Of a stretch of DNA of 64,000 bases, positions 7,894-59,181 are shown piece by piece. How positions within the stretch are numbered: position 1 is the stretch's first letter; every line of letters starts with the position of its first letter. A program made the translations under genes and the position numbers. The notes beneath the pieces were generated by a model that was not told where the DNA came from, made no database searches, and saw only the letters and a program-made list of their open reading frames with translations. The stretch lies in the IMG/VR virus record IMGVR_UViG_3300033145_003233, positions 372,001 through 436,000 of that record; one strand, 5' to 3'.

Positions 7894-8746
7894 TTCCTCC
7901 CCTTTTGATTTTTAATTTCTCACTATTATTTCTTTCATCTTCCGTCAAGTCAATATTTTTGTAACTCAATGACCTATGACAAGCTTTCAAATTCCTACAA
8001 AGTTTTTGCAATCCAATTGGCTCTAAACTAGCGGCGTTATCTGTTCCCTTGGCCGTCCTGTCTAAAGTAAAATGTCTCTCTATCCACTCTGCCCCTAAAA
8101 CGTAAGCACCAATATCTACAGCTATTCCTAAATGATGCCCGCTATAACCAACCCTCTCAAATACCCTTTTTAATGCTGTAATTTCCATCAAATATAATTC
8201 TTTAAATTTGACAGGATAACCAGAAGTCGTGTGATATACTACTATTCTGTTTTTCTTGTCATGAAAATAATTAAATAATTTTTCTTTCCCTTTTTTAGAA
8301 ATCATCCCCAAAGATATATGAACATCGCCATGATAATTATTAAAAAGAGTATCTAATAAAACATAATTTTCATTCATGGGAGATGGTATTTTGATGAAAT
8401 CTGGGTTAAGAGATGCTATCTCTAACGCAGAGTCCTCATCCCAGACAGAAGTAGAATACCCTATTTCTAACTCATCACAATAATCTTTCAATTCTACATG
8501 TTGAGGAATTGTAAATTCTAGATTAATCCTGTGTTTTAAATATGTTTCTCCAAAAGAATGCACAGGACAAGGATGCGGTCTATTATGCATATTCATAGGC
8601 ACTGCTTTTATCGGATTCCTTTTTTGAAATTTAACATAATCAGCACCGCACAATTTTGCCATTTGAATCATTTTCTTAGCTAAATCTATATCTCCTCGAT
8701 GATTACAACCTATCTCGGAAACTATTTTACATTTCTTGTATTCCAT
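7883..8746 (-). CDS. neuB: N-acetylneuraminate/nonulosonate synthase family, lacking C-terminal SAF domain
   Basis: EIGCNHRGD, VKFQKR, KIPS, GYSGH, IERHFTLDR motifs. Confidence 0.92.
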   Translation of the reverse strand: MEYKKCKIVSEIGCNHRGDIDLAKKMIQMAKLCGADYVKFQKRNPIKAVPMNMHNRPHPCPVHSFGETYLKHRINLEFTIPQHVELKDYCDELEIGYSTSVWDEDSALEIASLNPDFIKIPSPMNENYVLLDTLFNNYHGDVHISLGMISKKGKEKLFNYFHDKKNRIVVYHTTSGYPVKFKELYLMEITALKRVFERVGYSGHHLGIAVDIGAYVLGAEWIERHFTLDRTAKGTDNAASLEPIGLQKLCRNLKACHRSLSYKNIDLTEDERNNSEKLKIKRGGNDL

Positions 8747-33015: not shown

Positions 33016-34998
33016 TCAAAACAAATCCTCAAACATATCCACTGATTCTATTTTCTTTTTCGTTGTTTTTTTACGATCTCTCCTGATCATCAAAAAATCT
33101 TCCATCATTTCTTCCTTACGATCTATTTGCTTTTTCCCGAAAAATCCCGCTTCGATTAAAGCCTCCACCGCTCTAGTATCTACAATAGAAGAATCAGTTT
33201 TATTCACTATATCCCTCATGCCGCTATAAGGCTGATTGTCCTCTATATGCTTAGCCGTATTTGCTCTCATTCCCTTACATAACAAACTAGGTCTTATCTC
33301 TGTCTTTTTTATCCCGTTTTTTTCATCTTTTCTTTTTTCTATAACATATTGAACCTTCGATTTATTTATGTCTCTAGGAAGGAATTTGATATTCATTTTC
33401 CTTTTAAACTCTTTCTCAAAAGCATCTATTTTATCATATCTGTTTCCCTGAGAACCATTAATAGTCACATCTAACAAAGAGCAAATAAATTCATCAGGAT
33501 AATTAGCTTTCAAAAATGCCGTAGTATAAGAGTTGTATCCATAACAGGCACTATGAGCTAAATTAAATCCATACGAAGCAAATGGAGTAATAAATTTAGT
33601 CCAGTATTGTTGAGCTACATCCCTTGGAACCTTATTATCTATACATCCATCAACAAACTGTTTTTCAAACTTAGCCATAAGATATTCTTTTTTCTTTCCA
33701 ATGGCCTTAATCATTACATAACCATCTGTAATAGTAAAACCAGCTAAGTTGCTACATATCTGCATCACTTGTTCTTGAAAACACAAAACCCCATAAGTCT
33801 TTTTTAGATAAGACTTTACAAAAGGCTCAATTGACTTGTGGAAATAAGTTACTTCTTTTTCTCCGCTCTTCCTATCACAATATTCTGGAATACTATCCAT
33901 TGGACCAGGACGATAAAGAGCCAAACCAGCAACAATATCTTCAAAACTATCAACACCTATACTTCTCATGGTATGTTGCATACCATAATTCTCACATTGA
34001 AAAACTCCACCCAAATTACCATCTCTATATAATTTAAAAGCTCCCGCGTCATCAATAGGGAGATTCTCCAAATCAATTTCTATCCCCCAATAATCTTTTA
34101 TTTTTTCTACTGTTTTCTTAATTACCGTCAAAGTGGCAATAGCTAGAACATCAAATTTAATCAACCCCAAAACTTCTAAATCTTCATTAGGAAATTGGGT
34201 TGCCAGCACCCCCTTCTTAGCATTTCTTAATGGAGCTATTTCATTTAAAGGAATATTAGAAACAACCACGCCAGCCGCATGAAAACCGAAATTAGCGAAT
34301 GTGCCTTCGATCACCTCCATATACTCTTTTATACCTGTATCTTCGTACTTATCTATATAATGTCTAAAATCTGGACAATGCTCATAAGCATCATCGAAGG
34401 TTTTAATAAGATGACTATTCCCCCCTTCATCTTTAACTTTAAGCAAGCCATATTTCGGAAATGGTGATAAAATTTCAGAAGCCTTAGCAGCATTTTCGCT
34501 TATATAGGAATCTTTTCCTTTATGAAAAGCATCTGCGATATCTAGTGCTTTAACCACCCTAGTAACACATGATTTAAATTTTAATAAACCATGAGTACCT
34601 ATATTCCCAACATTCTCTCTGCCGTACTTATTTATAATATAACTATATACACCATCCCTATTCTCATAATCAAAATCAGTATCTATATCAGGCAAGCCAG
34701 CTCTAGCAAAAGCACGTCTGGTGGGGAGGAAATCTCCCGATGGCTTAGTTTTAGTCATACCAAGAAAATAGGCCGTCCAGCTATTAATATCATTCCTATT
34801 ACCAGCTTTTTTATCATGATTTTTCCATATATTGTAAAAAACTTCCAAATTATTCCTAGATTCCAGCCCCTCTGTAGTTTCCATTAATTCCATTTCTCGC
34901 TTTGCTTTTGAAAGAATTTTGGATAAATCAGAATGATCAGCGTATTTTCTCTCCACCGCCTCTATGATTTCTAACTTAATTACCCTCAATTCTGCCAT
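33016..34998 (-). CDS. dnaE: DNA polymerase III alpha subunit, C-terminal (catalytic) part
   Basis: PDIDTDF, HAAGVV, KFDVL, GVFQ.E, YRPGPM, FQEQVM, YGFN..HS. Confidence 0.93.
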   Translation of the reverse strand: MAELRVIKLEIIEAVERKYADHSDLSKILSKAKREMELMETTEGLESRNNLEVFYNIWKNHDKKAGNRNDINSWTAYFLGMTKTKPSGDFLPTRRAFARAGLPDIDTDFDYENRDGVYSYIINKYGRENVGNIGTHGLLKFKSCVTRVVKALDIADAFHKGKDSYISENAAKASEILSPFPKYGLLKVKDEGGNSHLIKTFDDAYEHCPDFRHYIDKYEDTGIKEYMEVIEGTFANFGFHAAGVVVSNIPLNEIAPLRNAKKGVLATQFPNEDLEVLGLIKFDVLAIATLTVIKKTVEKIKDYWGIEIDLENLPIDDAGAFKLYRDGNLGGVFQCENYGMQHTMRSIGVDSFEDIVAGLALYRPGPMDSIPEYCDRKSGEKEVTYFHKSIEPFVKSYLKKTYGVLCFQEQVMQICSNLAGFTITDGYVMIKAIGKKKEYLMAKFEKQFVDGCIDNKVPRDVAQQYWTKFITPFASYGFNLAHSACYGYNSYTTAFLKANYPDEFICSLLDVTINGSQGNRYDKIDAFEKEFKRKMNIKFLPRDINKSKVQYVIEKRKDEKNGIKKTEIRPSLLCKGMRANTAKHIEDNQPYSGMRDIVNKTDSSIVDTRAVEALIEAGFFGKKQIDRKEEMMEDFLMIRRDRKKTTKKKIESVDMFEDLF

Positions 34999-35022
34999 AT
35001 AAATCTCCCCTACGTCAGCTAT

Positions 35023-35051
35023 AGAATATCCGATTCCCTTTCACTTTTCAA
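35023..35051 (-). promoter_or_regulatory. sigma70-like promoter upstream of dnaE C-part
   Basis: TTGAAA AGTGAAAGGGAATCGGA TATTCT. Confidence 0.6.
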
Positions 35052-35264
35052 CTATAAATCTAAAATTTCGAATCTCAACCCAATATCTGAAACGATATCT
35101 CCATATCCCCTAATAGAAATAGGAGGTTGAAATCTTTTTTCTTTCAACTCGGATACGCTAATAGTGGGAGTAACAAACAATGGAGTATAAGGGACATATA
35201 TATATGCCTCCCCTAGAATATCTCCTCCTTTAAAACCAAGCCGGATTTGACTAGCTGTAGCCAA
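35052..35264 (-). CDS. Small protein resembling the C-terminal segment of T4 gp23-type major capsid protein, with RFEILDL tag
   Basis: LGFKG....AYIYVPYTPL..TP....FQP...R.YG versus gp23 VGYKG...AG.YY.PY..L.....FQP....RYG. Confidence 0.55.
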   Translation of the reverse strand: MATASQIRLGFKGGDILGEAYIYVPYTPLFVTPTISVSELKEKRFQPPISIRGYGDIVSDIGLRFEILDL

Positions 35265-35282
35265 TGTTTTACTCCCCCTCTT

Positions 35283-35513
35283 TTATAAATCCAAAATTTC
35301 AAACCTACTTTCTATAGGTTCCCATTCCCACATTATTGATGACCCATAAGGGACAATTATAGAACCAAGAGTTGTTCTTAACCTCATATATTCCAGCATC
35401 ACATCATGGGGAATCTCTCCCCTCCCATAATATTTTATCATCTCTTGAGTTCTCTCGTCCTCAAAAAATTCAACTTTCCCATTAATAGATATCTTAATAT
35501 CTGTCAACGCCAC
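35283..35513 (-). CDS. Hypothetical protein with RFEILDL tag
   Basis: Ends PIESRFEILDL-stop. Confidence 0.6.
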   Translation of the reverse strand: MALTDIKISINGKVEFFEDERTQEMIKYYGRGEIPHDVMLEYMRLRTTLGSIIVPYGSSIMWEWEPIESRFEILDL

Positions 35514-35826
35514 CTAAGTCATCCTCTAATTCATGCTCATGCGAATCATCATTTAAGTCAGAAAAATCCATAGCTCGAACAATATTCCCGATATGGTTAG
35601 CCAGTACAGGGTTTTCTGCCTGCATTTCCTCTATCGTATATCTATCTTTCATCCACCGATTCTCCATTTTTTTATCATCGAAAAAAACATACATACCCTT
35701 CCTAAATTCTGATTTATCGCCAAATTTAGTGTACACTAAGATTCCCCCATCCTTAATTTCTTCACGACTCACTATCTCTGTCACTCCTCTTGACCCATCA
35801 TCAAATTCATATCCTATATACAACAT
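35494..35826 (-). CDS. Hypothetical protein sharing C-terminal ELEDDLGGVDRY with DnaE N-part
   Basis: AGGAG SD; identical last 12 aa. Confidence 0.7.
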   Translation of the reverse strand: MLYIGYEFDDGSRGVTEIVSREEIKDGGILVYTKFGDKSEFRKGMYVFFDDKKMENRWMKDRYTIEEMQAENPVLANHIGNIVRAMDFSDLNDDSHEHELEDDLGGVDRY

Positions 35827-35858
35827 TCTATTCTCCTAACTTTTATTAATATTATCTT

Positions 35859-36896
35859 TCAATTTTTTATATGCTTCTTTAATTCCCAAATTGCTCTCTT
35901 ATATCTCGGCATAAATGTCTCATATTTACAATCCCCAGGTTTAACAGTCCTTAAAGTTATTCCAAGTTCTTTACATTTTTTACGCTTTCTCTTATCTCTA
36001 TCTTTTTGTTGCTTTAGCTTACTTTCTCCATGAATAGGTTTATAATGAAAGTTCCCACTAACCTCTACTGCATAATTTATATCAGGGAAATAAAAATCTA
36101 GCTCTAAAGGAGCAACAACTGTTCTATTATTTCTATCATATTTTACATTCAGTTTTTTAACCAATTTTTCAAACTGAGTCTCTACAAATGATTCTTTAAA
36201 TTTATACTTAGCGAAACATCTAATAGAACAAAAATGATGCTGATTCCTTTTAACATAAATAGGGGATTTAAAAACATTTTTATCGCATCCGTCACATTTT
36301 ACCCGAATTTTATTATTCTGAAATTCATTACAACACTTTTTTGAGCAAAATATATTATCCTTCCCCCTTAAAATGCTAGGAGATCTATATAAAATCTTAT
36401 CACAATTTTTACAATATACTCTCATTCTTTTATTATTATTGTCACTCCTGCATTTGATCGAGCAACAGTGAGTGAGGCTTCTTTTTCGTTCTGCTGAATT
36501 TTTATAAAAGTTTTTCCCACATACCTCACAGGCTACACTATTAATCCTTTGATAATAACTGGACTTACACTGCATATTACAAAAATATATATCTGTTTTA
36601 TTATCATCCCTCTCTCTCTTACATCTGTAAATAGATTTATGACAATTAGAACATCTTACTTCATTTTTTTCTATTTTATGCTTCGACAAACATATTTTAT
36701 TACAATAATGATGCTTAGACTTTTCTAAATATTTTTTTCCTCTCCTATTTTTTTTACCACAATAATCACAGTCTATTATTTTCGATCCCTTAATATCATT
36801 AGCACAATTCCTGGAACAACAATTTGTTTTACTTTTTAATATATGTGACAATTTTTTATAGAATTCTTTACCACAATAATCACAGTCTATAAGCAT
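35859..36896 (-). CDS. Homing endonuclease with Zn-finger (CxxC..FCS..C) repeats and Vsr/DUF559-like nuclease
   Basis: Six C..C.K.....(F/Y)C...C repeats; ELDFYFP..YAVE..G.FH. Confidence 0.75.
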   Translation of the reverse strand: MLIDCDYCGKEFYKKLSHILKSKTNCCSRNCANDIKGSKIIDCDYCGKKNRRGKKYLEKSKHHYCNKICLSKHKIEKNEVRCSNCHKSIYRCKRERDDNKTDIYFCNMQCKSSYYQRINSVACEVCGKNFYKNSAERKRSLTHCCSIKCRSDNNNKRMRVYCKNCDKILYRSPSILRGKDNIFCSKKCCNEFQNNKIRVKCDGCDKNVFKSPIYVKRNQHHFCSIRCFAKYKFKESFVETQFEKLVKKLNVKYDRNNRTVVAPLELDFYFPDINYAVEVSGNFHYKPIHGESKLKQQKDRDKRKRKKCKELGITLRTVKPGDCKYETFMPRYKRAIWELKKHIKN

Positions 36897-36978
36897 ATTT
36901 CTTATCTCCTATTGAAAAATAAATGTTCTCAACTATTATTAAATACAATTTAATAGGAGATAATCCCTCTTTTATTTT

Positions 36979-38391
36979 TTAATAACGGTCTACTCCCCCA
37001 AGATCATCTTCTAATTCTCTATCTACATCTCCTTTATCGGCGGCTTGTTGAATAAGGTTTTCCTCAAAGCCAAAATCTGACTCTTTTATAAACTTGAGCG
37101 AATCAAACCCAAGGAATCTCTCCCACAACAACCCATGTTCTATAGGGTCAATCCCATATGTAATCCCCAAACACCTCAACAAGACACTCGCATAACCCGA
37201 TCCACGCCCACAACCAACTAATATACCTCGTTCTTTGGCATCCTGGATATAATCTCGAACAATCAAAAAATAAGTCGAAAAATCATAATTATTACTTTCC
37301 TGTGCTACCAAAACATCTTTTAATTCCAGTTCTAATCTTTCAACATGTTTTTTACTATTATTCCATCCTACAGTCTTCATGCCTTCCCATGCAAGACGAC
37401 ACAAATATTCATAAGCATTTTTATATTCAGATGGAATTTCAAATTTGGGCAACCTCATTCCCCCAAATAAATTTTCTTCTATGTTCTTGGTATCTATTCG
37501 TTCAGCCAGCATAACAGAATTAGATAAACAATTAGAAGTGTTATTAAATATCTTCGCCATTTCTTCTGCACTTTTAAGATAGAACTCCATATGACTAAAA
37601 CTCAACCTGTCTGGATCTTTAACGCAACGTTGTTGTGACATGCACATTAAAACTTCTTGAGATTGGCCTTCTTTTCCAATTATATAGTGCCCATCATTCG
37701 TGCAAACTACAGGAATATTTAATTCAGAGGATAGTTTAAAAATTAAGGGGATAATCGCTTTCTCTTCCCTGATACCGTGGTACATTACTTCTAAAAAGAA
37801 ATTCTTATTAAATATCTCATTAAAAGTCCCGCATATCTTCTTTGCTCTATCATAGTTGCCATATACCAAATTGATATTAATAACACTTGATAAACAAGCA
37901 GAGCTACACATCACTCCCTCAGAATGCTTAGCCAGCAAATCTATATCAACTCTTGGATCAAAATAAAAACCATCAGTATATGACTTCTGAGACATACGAC
38001 ATATATTCTGATAACCCTTAAAATTCATAGCATATAAGTTGATATGCCTGTTTCCCCTTCTCCCATCAGGTTGGTTCTTTTTAGTTTTTTTAGTATCTTT
38101 TTTTTCATCGTATTGCCCTATATCCATTTTTCTAGAAAGATACATCTCACACCCAAGTATGGGTTTGATAGGAGCATAGGGAATACTATTGCCTTTTTTA
38201 TCTTTTGTGATACGACAATGTTGAAGGAATTTAATCCATCCCATAACAGACCCATGATCTGTTAGGGCAATAGCAGGAAACCCCATTTGCCTAGCTTTCA
38301 AAACAAGCTTATCAATTTTCGCGAGACCATCAAATTGGCTATACTCAGAATGTACGTGCCAATGAACAAAATCTTTATTTTCAAATTTCAT
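36979..38391 (-). CDS. dnaE: DNA polymerase III alpha subunit, N-terminal (PHP) part
   Basis: HVHSEYS..DG, TDHG, TNDGHY, YFLIV.D, GRGSG, LLWERFL. Confidence 0.93.
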   Translation of the reverse strand: MKFENKDFVHWHVHSEYSQFDGLAKIDKLVLKARQMGFPAIALTDHGSVMGWIKFLQHCRITKDKKGNSIPYAPIKPILGCEMYLSRKMDIGQYDEKKDTKKTKKNQPDGRRGNRHINLYAMNFKGYQNICRMSQKSYTDGFYFDPRVDIDLLAKHSEGVMCSSACLSSVININLVYGNYDRAKKICGTFNEIFNKNFFLEVMYHGIREEKAIIPLIFKLSSELNIPVVCTNDGHYIIGKEGQSQEVLMCMSQQRCVKDPDRLSFSHMEFYLKSAEEMAKIFNNTSNCLSNSVMLAERIDTKNIEENLFGGMRLPKFEIPSEYKNAYEYLCRLAWEGMKTVGWNNSKKHVERLELELKDVLVAQESNNYDFSTYFLIVRDYIQDAKERGILVGCGRGSGYASVLLRCLGITYGIDPIEHGLLWERFLGFDSLKFIKESDFGFEENLIQQAADKGDVDRELEDDLGGVDRY

Positions 38392-58361: not shown

Positions 58362-58864
58362 TGAAACTCGAAAAAGATTTTATACAATGTTGTGCAGAAT
58401 TTTTATTCAAAATAGCTGATTTTGAAGACTATGATGATAAACACTATATTAGTATGGGCCACGGGGATGGAGAACACCTTTGTTTTAAGTGTTGTGAAAA
58501 AGAAGTCGAAAAAATTAATAAAGAATTGCCCGAGAATGAAGAAAAAGCTTTTGTAGATGGAGGATGGAATGGTGCGGGTATTGACGGAAATGATGAAGGA
58601 CCTGATTCCTGTGATATATGCTATAAAAAATTAGATTATTCTTTATCTGAAAGTGGAGTTATACAAGAATGTAAATTTTTCTTAGAGGAAGACTTAGTAG
58701 AAATAACTCCGAATAATGCTGCTGAACTATATTATCTTTTCGACAATAGTGATAATTATGATTTTCAAGGTAATGACTTAAATAAATTGACAAAATTAGC
58801 CAATAAAATTTGGCGTCTTTTAGATCAAACAATTGAGAGTAGGTTTGAGATTTTAGATTTATGA
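58358..58864 (+). CDS. Hypothetical Cys-containing protein with RFEILDL tag
   Basis: Ends IESRFEILDL-stop. Confidence 0.7.
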   Translation: MMKLEKDFIQCCAEFLFKIADFEDYDDKHYISMGHGDGEHLCFKCCEKEVEKINKELPENEEKAFVDGGWNGAGIDGNDEGPDSCDICYKKLDYSLSESGVIQECKFFLEEDLVEITPNNAAELYYLFDNSDNYDFQGNDLNKLTKLANKIWRLLDQTIESRFEILDL

Positions 58865-59181
58865 GATATAAAGTAGGAGATAAAGTAAGAATAAAGACGC
58901 AAGAACAAATGAGGGAAGAAGGACATGTGGGAAGACATAGTAATAAGGTGATAGTCTGTAATTATAGATATTTTTTTGATTCGATAGAATCTGATGTCAA
59001 TAAATATTCTACAGATAGAATATTAACAATTGCAAGTGTAGAAAACGATGAGGATGGGGATTATTATTACACAATGAAAGGGATGTGTTGGAGATGGAAC
59101 GATCCTATGATTGAAGGTATAGTAAAAAATTGTGAGAAGCCCATATCTATTAAAAGCAGATTTGATATTTTAGATTTATGA
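58861..59181 (+). CDS. Small KOW/SH3-like protein with RFDILDL tag
   Basis: MRYKVGDKVRIK (paralog of 52897-53121); ends IKSRFDILDL-stop. Confidence 0.7.
   Translation: MRYKVGDKVRIKTQEQMREEGHVGRHSNKVIVCNYRYFFDSIESDVNKYSTDRILTIASVENDEDGDYYYTMKGMCWRWNDPMIEGIVKNCEKPISIKSRFDILDL

What the first reader, a model, noticed from the sequence alone, without database searches (positions are those of the whole stretch)
35494..37017. Identical 12-aa C-terminus ELEDDLGGVDRY on DnaE-N and an unrelated small protein
Seen: both 36979-38391 (DnaE-N) and 35494-35826 end in ELEDDLGGVDRY-stop. Seven of the 12 codons differ synonymously (E GAA/GAG, D GAT/GAC, L CTT/TTA, G GGG/GGT, G GGA/GGC, V GTA/GTT, R CGT/AGA) with no amino-acid change, and the upstream sequence is unrelated. 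So this is not a fresh target-site duplication but a peptide under selection. Inference: a second docking-tag system. The tail may tether DnaE-N to DnaE-C or the replisome, and the 110-aa protein may be a competitor, regulator or alternative partner using the same socket.
Basis: partly seen in the sequence, partly recalled or inferred. Interest (0 to 1): 0.8.

Follow-up and report, generated by a model that had tools for sequence, protein, structure and literature searches.

The report
Displaced polymerase tail beside a homing endonuclease
The second copy of the 12-residue tail is the old 3' end of the split polymerase gene, pushed aside when a selfish endonuclease cassette inserted and then fused by a deletion onto a truncated cassette gene, so it is not evidence for a second docking-tag system, although the tail on the polymerase itself is a real, strongly conserved peptide.

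Summary
DnaE-N (38391-36979, minus strand) and a 110-aa ORF (35826-35494) both end in ELEDDLGGVDRY-stop. Nine nucleotides in seven codons differ, all synonymously.

- **DnaE-N tail:** it is a genuine conserved peptide. About 45 distinct metagenomic DnaE-N genes (51-77% identical) end in DDLGG[VI]DRY after a variable, predicted-disordered acidic linker, with free synonymous variation.
- **Second copy:** it is a by-product of a mobile element. A Vsr-like (EDxHD-type) free-standing homing endonuclease gene sits directly behind DnaE-N in scattered relatives. In six of the eight distinct endonuclease-bearing arrangements examined, a diverged duplicate of the local DnaE-N 3' end lies at the far end of the cassette.
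- **Origin of copy B:** it matches all 36 nt of the natural DnaE-N end of endonuclease-free relatives. Those codons embed the Shine-Dalgarno and GTG start of the next gene, and copy B still supplies them here.
- **The 110-aa ORF:** its one homologue (191 aa, locus L061) follows the same endonuclease but stops in another frame, leaving the relic untranslated. The window ORF is that gene shortened by a ~260-280-nt deletion that fused it in frame to the relic.

A competitor role for the chimera is not excluded but has no support.

The parts
36979..38391 (-). DnaE-N: N-terminal piece of a split Pol III alpha (PHP domain plus first part of the palm), 470 aa
   Evidence: Pfam PHP 8e-43 and DNA_pol3_alpha profile positions 1-97; phrog_405 positions 40-435. 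The split lies at the same site in all relatives.
36979..37017 (-). Tail copy A: the functional DnaE-N C-terminus ELEDDLGGVDRY plus stop, in the freely varying codon class
   Evidence: It matches the dual-coding consensus at 23 of 33 nt. The endonuclease 5'UTR follows directly and is shared with L061, L020, L067 and L064.
36902..36963 (-). Hairpin in the endonuclease 5'UTR: TTATCTCCTATT pairs with AATAGGAGATAA and covers the endonuclease's Shine-Dalgarno
   Evidence: A 12-bp stem in both the MFE and centroid folds, -16.2 kcal/mol, z = -1.85. The same arms occur in L061 and 9 bp of them in L020. Such hairpins are described for free-standing endonuclease genes (PMC2677866).
35859..36896 (-). Free-standing homing endonuclease gene, 345 aa: repeated zinc-finger modules plus a C-terminal Vsr-like (EDxHD-type) nuclease domain
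   Evidence: PHROG 559/1271/9084 'HNH/homing endonuclease'; zf-FCS. AF2 model pLDDT 87. Foldseek matches Vsr 1cw0 and I-Bth0305I 3r3p, probability 1.00, TM 0.70 to the target. Invariant E265, D267, E278, H284, D301. Homologues always lie just after DnaE-N and are scattered on the DnaE-N tree.
35533..35826 (-). Truncated cassette gene: residues 1-98 of the 110-aa ORF, homologous to the first 97-104 residues of a 191-aa protein (P0002)
   Evidence: phmmer E 3e-21 and BLASTP 9e-31, 53% identity, with homology ending at the tail. P0002 occupies the same position after the endonuclease in L061. dN/dS is 0.78.
35494..35532 (-). Tail copy B (relic): displaced original DnaE-N 3' end, 12 codons plus stop, now the end of the 110-aa ORF. 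It holds the Shine-Dalgarno GAGGA (35526-35522) and GTG start (35513-35511) of the next gene
   Evidence: 36 of 36 nt identical to the natural DnaE-N end of L030/L055, and 30 of 33 to the dual-coding consensus. The L061 relic differs at 1 nt over the 11 shared codons and at the G/T that makes its upstream stop (2 of 36 nt), although untranslated there.
35283..35513 (-). p76-family gene (76 aa, ends RFEILDL) whose GTG start lies inside tail copy B
   Evidence: Homologues in L008, L013, L019, L023, L030, L047, L055 and L061 start at the same GTG inside the natural DnaE-N tail.
35052..35264 (-). Second small gene of the gap (70 aa, ends RFEILDL)
   Evidence: Homologues in 15 other loci between DnaE-N and DnaE-C.
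33016..34998 (-). DnaE-C: C-terminal piece of the split polymerase (rest of palm with PDIDTDF, fingers, HhH), 660 aa, with a conserved N-terminal extension of about 98 aa
   Evidence: Pfam DNA_pol3_alpha 69-260, DNA_pol3_finger, HHH_6; phrog_405 positions 439-952.

Best explanation
The two identical tails are two copies of the 3' end of one gene, DnaE-N, flanking an inserted mobile cassette.

Shown:
1. The polymerase of this megaphage clade is encoded as two genes split inside the palm domain, and the gap between them is a variable insertion hotspot.
2. In the ancestral arrangement DnaE-N ends in ...DDLGGVDRY-stop. In one common arrangement the next gene (p76 family) starts at a GTG inside those codons, preceded by a GAGGA formed by the Glu-Asp codons.
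3. A free-standing Vsr-like homing endonuclease gene, with a 5'UTR hairpin over its ribosome-binding site, sits immediately after DnaE-N in scattered members of the clade.
4. In six of the eight distinct endonuclease-bearing arrangements examined, DnaE-N is completed by an upstream copy of its end (A), and a second, diverged copy of that same end (B) lies at the far side of the cassette. The duplicate is 11-14 codons in the window, L061, L020 and L067, 45 codons in L009, and the different ending IKEKDFG[LF] in L062.
5. Window copy B is the dual-coding type of DnaE-N end and still provides the start of the 76-aa gene.
6. The 110-aa ORF is the first half of a 191-aa cassette gene.

Inferred:
- The cassette entered by endonuclease-triggered break repair from a diverged donor. 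It brought copy A with it and left the recipient's own end (B) to the right of the break.
- B persists because it is the translation-initiation region of the downstream gene, and probably the right-hand homology arm for further homing.
- A deletion of about 260-280 nt (2 mod 3), at a short GAA microhomology, then fused the cassette gene in frame to B.

The synonymous-only differences therefore come from protein-level selection on A as the polymerase's tail, and from DNA-level retention of B. They do not come from selection for the peptide on the small protein.

The tail on DnaE-N itself most likely works as a tethered C-terminal docking peptide on a disordered acidic linker. Its partner is unknown.
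For: - Tail conservation: the scan found 53 metagenome loci where about one is expected by chance. About 45 distinct DnaE-N C-termini carry it, with every synonymous codon in use.
- Genome-wide count: large contigs of 351-499 kb carry the tail once. Only the window's contig (548 kb) and L009 (53.5-kb contig) carry two exact copies; other cassette loci have a variant second copy.
- Endonuclease homologues occur in L020 (71%), L009 (38%) and L061 (83%), and P0007, P0009, P0010 and P0012 all lie right after DnaE-N.
- Second copies downstream: L020 mini-ORF; L061 untranslated, with an in-frame TAA just upstream; L009 45 codons; L067/68 fused to an unrelated 120-aa ORF; L062/63 where the endonuclease ORF ends in a copy of that lineage's tail-less DnaE-N end.
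- Dual-coding class: 13 distinct natural ends embed a GTG with an ORF of at least 47 codons; 11 end in RF[DE][IL]LD[LI] (five with one extra residue), one ends ERFEILGL, one has no such ending. Third-position identity is 0.74 against 0.45 in the ends without a GTG there. B copies match the consensus at 28-33 of 33 nt, A copies at 22-27. Window B is 36/36 identical to L030/L055.
- p110 residues 1-97 match P0002 residues 1-96 (E 3e-21), and the homology stops at the tail. A DNA alignment shows the internal deletion.
- dN/dS is 0.78 for p110/P0002 against 0.15 for the endonuclease at equal dS.
- Endonuclease fold and catalytic residues and the 5'UTR hairpin.
- Endonuclease carriers need 5 changes for 5 rows on the DnaE-N tree.
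- There is no intron or intein signal between the pieces.
- The tail is disordered in the monomer model.
Against: - The 110-aa ORF has a good AGGAG site and is still open after 31% nucleotide divergence from its relative. That is unlikely under pure decay (P about 0.04 if half the change fell on this branch, 0.005 if all). The chimera is therefore probably translated and carries the polymerase tail.
- Fusion to the relic recurs: the window, L067/68, L026, and the endonuclease itself in L062/63. That is 4 of 7 relics against about one third expected, which is not significant but is suggestive.
- In L067 no downstream gene overlaps the relic. Both copies there share the otherwise unseen variant EED, which retention as an initiation region does not explain.
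- With only two members of the 110-aa family, the direction of change (deletion in the window or insertion in L061) rests on parsimony.
- The repair pathway and the cleavage site are inferred, not shown.
Confidence: 0.8

Rival explanations
1. One reading: a second docking-tag system. The 110-aa protein is selected to carry the same C-terminal peptide as DnaE-N and competes for, or shares, the socket on DnaE-C or another replisome protein.
For: The tail on DnaE-N is a conserved peptide on a disordered linker. The 110-aa ORF looks translated and has stayed open. Three unrelated ORFs end in the tail. L067 has the same rare EED variant in both copies.
Against: The only family member besides the window's own protein lacks the tail and stops in another frame at the relic. 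The relic is as conserved when untranslated (L061) or in fragments (L009, L020). A second copy is seen only with the endonuclease cassette, and in L062 the duplicated end is a different sequence altogether. In L020 the DnaE-N copy has changed (DDMGGADRY) while the relic has not, so the two do not co-vary. Large contigs without the endonuclease carry the tail only on DnaE-N.
Confidence: 0.1
2. A duplication of the tail within this genome (a target-site duplication at insertion), followed by long independent divergence with both copies held by peptide-level selection.
For: Two copies flank an inserted element, and the differences are all synonymous.
Against: Copy B is nucleotide-identical to the natural ends of distant endonuclease-free relatives whose DnaE-N is only about 75% identical in protein and saturated at synonymous sites elsewhere. 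It belongs to a different codon class from copy A. The A/B codon differences are shared with L061 and L020. Duplicate length ranges from 8 to 45 codons between lineages, unlike a fixed target-site duplication.
Confidence: 0.06
3. The relic is kept mainly as the right-hand homology arm of the homing cassette, and part of it is re-copied from the recipient's functional tail at each homing event. On this view it is not kept as the initiation region of the downstream gene.
For: Relics occur where no gene start overlaps them (L009, L067). L067 copy B looks chimeric: A-type GAA GAA GAT joined to dual-coding-type GGT GGC GTT. Endonuclease carriers are scattered on the tree, implying repeated transfer.
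Against: In the window, L061, L020 and L026 the relic spans exactly from the Shine-Dalgarno to the DnaE-N stop and carries the downstream gene's GTG. The two reasons do not exclude each other.
Confidence: 0.3

Closest known systems
Free-standing Vsr-like (EDxHD, I-Bth0305I-type) homing endonucleases in 'fractured genes' of phages (Dassa et al. 2009, PMC2677866)
   Same: A free-standing endonuclease gene with a Vsr-like catalytic domain lies between the two halves of a split replication gene, with a hairpin in its 5'UTR. That paper also lists DnaE loci and one intein-less case (SbcD-like) with short extra residues at the break.
   Different: There is no split intein here: the halves are plain separate genes. 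The endonuclease did not create the split, which predates it and exists in all endonuclease-free relatives. The N-terminal DNA-binding part is a string of zinc-finger modules. The passages of that paper I read do not mention diverged duplicates of the upstream gene's 3' end or chimeric ORFs reading into them.
Element-borne replacement 3' ends: e14 (and phage 21) in the icd gene of E. coli, leaving the icdC fragment (Hill et al. 1989, as described in PMC13626634)
   Same: The inserted element carries its own version of the host gene's 3' end, which completes the gene. The displaced original end stays as a fragment on the far side, and the two copies differ mostly synonymously.
   Different: e14 inserts with a site-specific recombinase at an att site. 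Here the mobile agent is a homing endonuclease in a lytic-type megaphage genome. The relic doubles as the initiation region of an overlapping gene and is repeatedly captured by cassette ORFs.
Genes in pieces made by free-standing endonucleases in T4-like phages (nrdA/mobE in Aeh1; split gp43 polymerase in Aeromonas phage 25)
   Same: An essential replication or nucleotide-metabolism gene is encoded in two pieces with an endonuclease gene between them (mentioned in PMC2677866; details from my own knowledge).
   Different: In those cases the endonuclease insertion is thought to have made the split. Here the split is clade-wide and older than the endonuclease.
Acidic C-terminal docking tails of replication proteins (SSB C-terminal tip; T7 gp2.5 and gp4 tails that share a site on T7 DNA polymerase)
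   Same: The DnaE-N tail is a short, conserved, acidic C-terminal peptide ending in an aromatic residue, on a variable disordered linker. The comparison with SSB and T7 rests on my own knowledge.
   Different: No partner is known. The motif DDLGGVDRY is unrelated in sequence. In T7 two proteins carry such tails by selection, whereas here the second carrier is an accident of insertion. The tail has been lost in some lineages (L003, L004, L062, L065).

Membership tests
Vsr-like / EDxHD homing endonucleases | Catalytic domain with the Vsr / I-Bth0305I fold | tested here: met
   AF2 model pLDDT 87. Foldseek against PDB: 1cw0 Vsr E 7e-3, probability 1.00; 3r3p I-Bth0305I catalytic domain probability 1.00, TM 0.70 normalised to the target, 108 columns. 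E-values are modest because the query is a multi-domain model.
Vsr-like / EDxHD homing endonucleases | Conserved acidic and histidine active-site residues (Vsr Asp51, His69, Asp97, plus the family's extra Glu) | tested here: met
   E265, D267, E278, H284 and D301 are invariant in 28 homologues. Spacing is close to Vsr: D267 to H284 is 17 residues (Vsr 18) and E278 to H284 is 6 (Vsr 7). The residue-to-residue correspondence is inferred from spacing and fold, not from a superposition I inspected.
Vsr-like / EDxHD homing endonucleases | Mobile: present or absent at one fixed site of a conserved host gene among related genomes | tested here: met
   All homologues looked up lie directly after DnaE-N. 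Carriers are scattered on the DnaE-N tree, 5 changes for 5 rows.
Vsr-like / EDxHD homing endonucleases | Site-specific cleavage of the endonuclease-free allele | not testable with these tools
   Needs an in vitro cleavage assay.
Fractured genes sensu Dassa et al. 2009 | Split intein halves flanking the endonuclease gene | tested here: not met
   No Hint or intein Pfam hit in the DnaE-N tail or the DnaE-C N-terminal extension. The extension lacks the C-terminal intein His-Asn plus Cys/Ser/Thr motif (read). Inteins elsewhere in the gene in relatives are detected readily.
Fractured genes sensu Dassa et al. 2009 | Free-standing endonuclease gene between the halves of a conserved enzyme gene | tested here: met
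   R458, D462, D463, L464, G465, G466, D468, R469 and Y470 are at least 90% conserved in 24 DnaE-N sequences, while the linker is variable. pLDDT is below 50 for residues 435-470.
   The only homologue (P0002, 191 aa) lacks it. The other tail-bearing ORFs (L067 p120, L026) are unrelated to each other.
   No complex prediction or binding assay was available.
Element-borne replacement 3' end (e14/icd type) | Two diverged copies of the host gene's 3' end flank the element, with the upstream one completing the gene | tested here: met
   Window, L061, L020, L009, L067 and L062.
Element-borne replacement 3' end (e14/icd type) | Integration by a site-specific recombinase at an att site | tested here: not met
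   No integrase is seen in the cassette. Its genes are the endonuclease and small ORFs with no family match.

The most novel reading that the evidence does not exclude
The chimeras are not inert. By repeatedly capturing the polymerase's C-terminal docking peptide, cassette-encoded proteins (the 110-aa protein here, the 120-aa protein in L067/68, the ORF in L026) are delivered to the tail's binding site on the replisome. There they would modulate polymerase assembly or favour the selfish cassette, for instance by coupling homing to replication. Insertion-made relics would then be a ready source of new replisome-targeted proteins.
Probability: 0.1. Interest if true: 0.7.

Novelty: new variant of a known kind. 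Interest (0 to 1): 0.35.

Why it matters
This is a clean worked example of a trap in sequence reading. Synonymous-only differences between two copies of a peptide usually mean selection on both. They also arise when a mobile element brings a diverged replacement end for the gene it hits, and the displaced end is held by an overlapping start signal.

It documents a site-specific Vsr-like homing endonuclease family. These endonucleases target the 3' end of the first half of a split replicative polymerase in uncultivated megaphages. Their insertion repeatedly creates chimeric ORFs ending in the polymerase's own tail.

The conserved DDLGG[VI]DRY C-terminus of DnaE-N does not appear in the literature library I could search. 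It is a concrete handle for asking how a polymerase split inside its palm domain assembles or recruits partners.

Tried and rejected
- **Relatives of the 110-aa protein.** A word-indexed search of 5.8 billion proteins and tblastn against phage records found nothing but the protein itself. Only the exhaustive HMMER search found the one real homologue.
- **Homology to the L020 cassette ORF.** I thought the 110-aa protein might be related to the 93-aa ORF after the endonuclease in L020. BLASTP found no alignment, so I rejected this.
- **A longer relic.** I thought residues 81-98 of the 110-aa protein might be a degraded DnaE-N linker, because of weak tblastn hits at E 0.001-0.009. I rejected this because P0002 aligns across those residues.
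- **Intron or intein joining the two polymerase pieces.** There is no Rfam hit and no intein domain. In several relatives the two genes are adjacent, about 15-30 nt apart.
- **The original split as a duplicated-flank event.** The Pfam profile overlap (1-97 against 69-260) suggested it, but profile-profile comparison of the DnaE-N C-terminal and DnaE-C N-terminal regions gave E 0.3. It remains unsupported.
- **Hidden tail in L004 or L003.** None is present in any frame.
- **Sequence-only family assignment of the endonuclease.** PDB and NCBIfam searches gave nothing useful, so the fold comparison was needed.
- **Promoter and terminator scans.** Uninformative: 19 promoter-like sites against 16.6 expected, and no terminators.
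- **A scripting error.** My first codon-class split used a wrong offset. I redid it correctly.
Full report
**1. The observation**

On the minus strand the gene order is as follows:
- DnaE-N, 38391-36979, 470 aa
- a 345-aa gene, 36896-35859
- the 110-aa ORF, 35826-35494
- a 76-aa ORF, 35513-35283
- a 70-aa ORF, 35264-35052
- DnaE-C, 34998-33016, 660 aa

DnaE-N and the 110-aa ORF both end in ELEDDLGGVDRY followed by TAA. The 12 codons differ at 9 nucleotides in 7 codons, all synonymous. Upstream of the 12 codons the two sequences are unrelated. The motif occurs nowhere else in the six frames of the window, and only twice in the whole 548-kb source contig.

**2. The setting**

The window is part of a viral contig of about 548 kb, so the source is a megaphage.
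- Pfam and PHROG profiles show that DnaE-N holds the PHP domain and the first part of the Pol III alpha palm. DnaE-C holds the rest, including the catalytic PDIDTDF strand, the fingers and the HhH domain.
- The split lies at the same point in every relative found.
- The gap holds anything from nothing (the two genes 15-30 nt apart) to eight small genes, or a ClpP gene.
- There is no intron or intein signal between the pieces.

The split is therefore old and clade-wide, and the gap is an insertion hotspot.

**3. The tail on DnaE-N is real and conserved**

A degenerate DNA pattern for DDLGG[V/I/M]DRY-stop hit 53 metagenome loci, where about one would be expected by chance.
- In nearly all of them the hit is the C-terminus of a DnaE-N homologue, 51-77% identical to the window's.
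- The tail follows the conserved SDFGFEE segment and a linker that varies in length and sequence.
- Across 42 distinct natural ends, the Asp-Asp, Gly-Gly, Asp, Arg and Tyr positions never change, while every synonymous codon is used.
- In an alignment of 24 full-length proteins these positions are at least 90% conserved.
- In an AlphaFold2 monomer model, residues 435-470 have pLDDT below 50, so the tail does not pack back on DnaE-N.

However, the tail is absent in four lineages: L004 (nested among tail-bearing relatives), L003, L062 and L065. It is therefore not indispensable for joining the two halves. No partner could be tested.

**4. The gene between the two copies is a homing endonuclease**

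- The 345-aa protein matches PHROG families annotated as HNH or homing endonuclease, and carries zinc-finger repeats.
- Its AlphaFold2 model is confident (pLDDT 87).
- The C-terminal domain matches Vsr (1cw0) and the catalytic domain of the homing endonuclease I-Bth0305I (3r3p, TM 0.70 to the target, probability 1.00).
- E265, D267, E278, H284 and D301 are invariant in 28 homologues, with spacing close to the Vsr active site.
- A 12-bp stem pairs TTATCTCCTATT, just after the DnaE-N stop, with AATAGGAGATAA over the endonuclease's Shine-Dalgarno. The same arms occur in L061 and, over 9 bp, in L020. Such hairpins were described for free-standing endonuclease genes in fractured phage genes (PMC2677866).
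- Every homologue whose context I fetched lies directly after DnaE-N.
- Carriers are scattered over the DnaE-N tree: 5 changes for 5 carriers, and well-supported branches force at least 4.
- Between the window and L061, synonymous divergence is lower in the endonuclease (0.52) than in the adjacent end of DnaE-N (1.0).

All of this is the signature of a site-specific mobile element.

**5. A second copy of the DnaE-N end goes with the cassette**

| Locus | Endonuclease identity to window | DnaE-N's own end | Second copy downstream |
|---|---|---|---|
| L061 | 83% | ...DLEDDLGGVDRY | Relic TTA GAG GAC GAC TTA GGT GGC GTT GAC AGA TAT TAA, preceded by an in-frame TAA, so not translated in the tail frame |
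| L020 | 71% | ...EDDMGGADRY (diverged) | Consensus-type copy in an 18-codon mini-ORF after two other cassette genes |
| L009 | 38% | ...DVEDDLGGVDRY | 45 codons of DnaE-N end, not in an ORF with an ATG |
| L067/L068 | 72% | ...ELEEDLGGVDRY | An unrelated 120-aa ORF ends in ...EEDLGGVDRY; 6 of 10 codons differ synonymously |
| L062/L063 | 63% | ...FIKEKDFGL (no linker or tail) | The endonuclease ORF itself ends in ...LIKEKDFGF |
| L064, L065 | 59%, 55% | ...DDQGGVDRY; ...DFEPISDAV | None found |

The L062 case shows that what is duplicated is the local 3' end of DnaE-N, not one particular peptide. Large contigs without the endonuclease (351-499 kb) carry the tail once.

**6. Copy B is the resident end and still does a job at the DNA level**

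Natural DnaE-N ends differ in whether they are dual-coding.
- Thirteen distinct ends read GAG GAT GAY TTA GGT GGC GTT GAY AGA TAY. They contain a GTG in the +1 frame that opens an ORF of at least 47 codons. Eleven of the 13 end in RF[DE][IL]LD[LI] (five with one further residue), one ends ERFEILGL, and one has no such ending. The GAGGA made by the Glu-Asp codons lies 8 nt upstream of the GTG.
- Third-position identity in this class is 0.74, against 0.45 in the 17 ends with no GTG at that position.
- Window copy B belongs to the dual-coding class. It is identical over all 36 nt to the natural ends of L030/L055, whose DnaE-N proteins are only about 75% identical to the window's.
- The 76-aa gene starts at that GTG (35513). 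Its homologues start at the same place in endonuclease-free relatives.
- Copy A has the other codon pattern (GGG GGA GTA), lacks both GAGGA and GTG, and is followed at once by the endonuclease 5'UTR shared with L061, L020, L067 and L064.
- All B copies match the dual-coding consensus at 28-33 of 33 nt, and A copies at 22-27.

The absence of amino-acid change in B therefore follows from DNA-level conservation of a translation-initiation region. That conservation is just as strong where B is not translated in the tail frame.

**7. What the 110-aa ORF is**

- Word-indexed and phage searches found only the protein itself. An exhaustive HMMER search found one homologue, P0002 (191 aa, E 3e-21).
- P0002 aligns with residues 1-97 at 53% identity, and the homology stops where the tail begins.
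- P0002 is the gene right after the endonuclease in L061. It ends at a TAG formed by the relic's TTA-GAG, in the frame of the downstream gene.
- Aligning the two loci shows that the window lacks about 260 or 278 nt, depending on which of two TATGAA sites is the breakpoint. Both lengths are 2 mod 3, which moves the ORF into the relic's frame. The junction has a GAA microhomology (coordinates read).
- dN/dS between the two N-terminal halves is 0.78, against 0.15 for the endonuclease at the same dS.

The tail is therefore not a feature of this protein family. The window's ORF is a truncated cassette gene fused to the relic.

**8. What remains open**

- The 110-aa ORF has a good ribosome-binding site. 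Its staying open after this much divergence is unlikely under pure decay (P about 0.04 to 0.005). It is probably made, or the fusion is recent.
- In-frame capture of the relic recurs in 4 of 7 relics. This may reflect selection for translation through the relic to keep coupling to the overlapping downstream start, chance, or function.
- In L067 no gene overlaps the relic and both copies share the unusual EED. This fits better with the relic serving as a homology arm that is partly re-copied at each homing event. It also weakly fits a functional second tail.
- I put the functional-competitor reading at about 10%.

**9. Comparison with known systems**

- The endonuclease is a member of the Vsr-like/EDxHD family first described in fractured phage genes (PMC2677866). 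The locus is not a fractured gene in the strict sense, because it has no split intein and the split predates the endonuclease.
- The duplicated, synonymously diverged gene end mirrors e14 in icd with its icdC fragment (PMC13626634), with a homing endonuclease taking the place of an integrase.
- Neither motif appears in the literature library I could search.

**10. Verdict**

This is a new variant of known kinds, of moderate interest.

Noticed in passing
window 59161-59181(+), 58844-58864(+), 52917-52897, 39994-39974, 39746-39726, 39214-39194, 38579-38559, 35303-35283, 35072-35052, 19274-19254 (all -): Ten ORFs in the window end in R[FWL][DE][IL]LDL-stop, against none in a reversed-sequence control. 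The same ending closes most small genes in the DnaE gap of relatives (L002, L020, L061 and others). Codons vary (TTT/TTC, GAA/GAG/GAT, ATT/ATA/CTC, TTA/TTG), so it looks like a peptide-level motif. Its function is unknown.
   Followed up: partly
window 33016-38391; L002-L004, L033, L045 and others: The replicative Pol III alpha of this megaphage clade is always encoded as two genes split just before the catalytic PDIDxDF strand. DnaE-C has a conserved N-terminal extension of about 98 aa. The gap holds 0-8 small genes, or a ClpP gene in L003. How a polymerase split inside its palm assembles is not known.
   Followed up: partly
L009:6448-9027(-), L017:5187-7775(-), L034:426-3116(-); L062:5452-7971: LAGLIDADG-type inteins interrupt DnaE-N at three different positions in relatives, and DnaE-C in L062/L063. 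In L062 and L064, DnaE-C is itself cut into further pieces (210 + 839 aa; a 335-aa piece followed by others). This polymerase is a hotspot for selfish elements.
   Followed up: partly
L020:6140-6179 and 7949-7988: In L020 the polymerase's own tail has changed at two otherwise invariant positions (DDMGGADRY). The relic downstream keeps the consensus DDLGGVDRY and forms an 18-codon mini-ORF (MKILARDIEDDLGGVDRY) whose ATG overlaps the stop of the preceding gene (ATGA).
   Followed up: no
L067:108-147 and 2004-2043 (same in L068): Both tail copies carry Glu-Glu-Asp where all 42 other distinct ends have x-Asp-Asp. Copy B looks chimeric, with A-type GAA GAA GAT followed by dual-coding-type GGT GGC GTT. 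This is unexplained: it could be gene conversion, a junction inside the tail, or co-selection.
   Followed up: partly
window 33016-33060 (C-terminus of DnaE-C); L002, L003, L004 equivalents: DnaE-C ends in ...SVDMFEDLF, and its relatives end in ...IDIFG, ...HDIFA and ...ESLFD. These resemble clamp-binding motifs of the QLxLF type. This is read from the translations only and was not tested.
   Followed up: no
window 36979-37290 and 34700-34998: The Pfam DNA_pol3_alpha profile matches overlap between the two pieces (positions 1-97 in DnaE-N, 69-260 in DnaE-C). INSWTAYFLGMTKTKP in DnaE-C resembles the GSGYASVLLRCLGIT helix of DnaE-N by eye. Profile-profile comparison did not support a duplicated flank (E 0.3).
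   Followed up: yes
L004:11230-11660: L004 is nested among tail-bearing relatives on the DnaE-N tree, yet it has lost the linker and tail (DnaE-N ends ...FGFATDQGARA). This suggests the tail is dispensable or compensated in that phage.
   Followed up: partly
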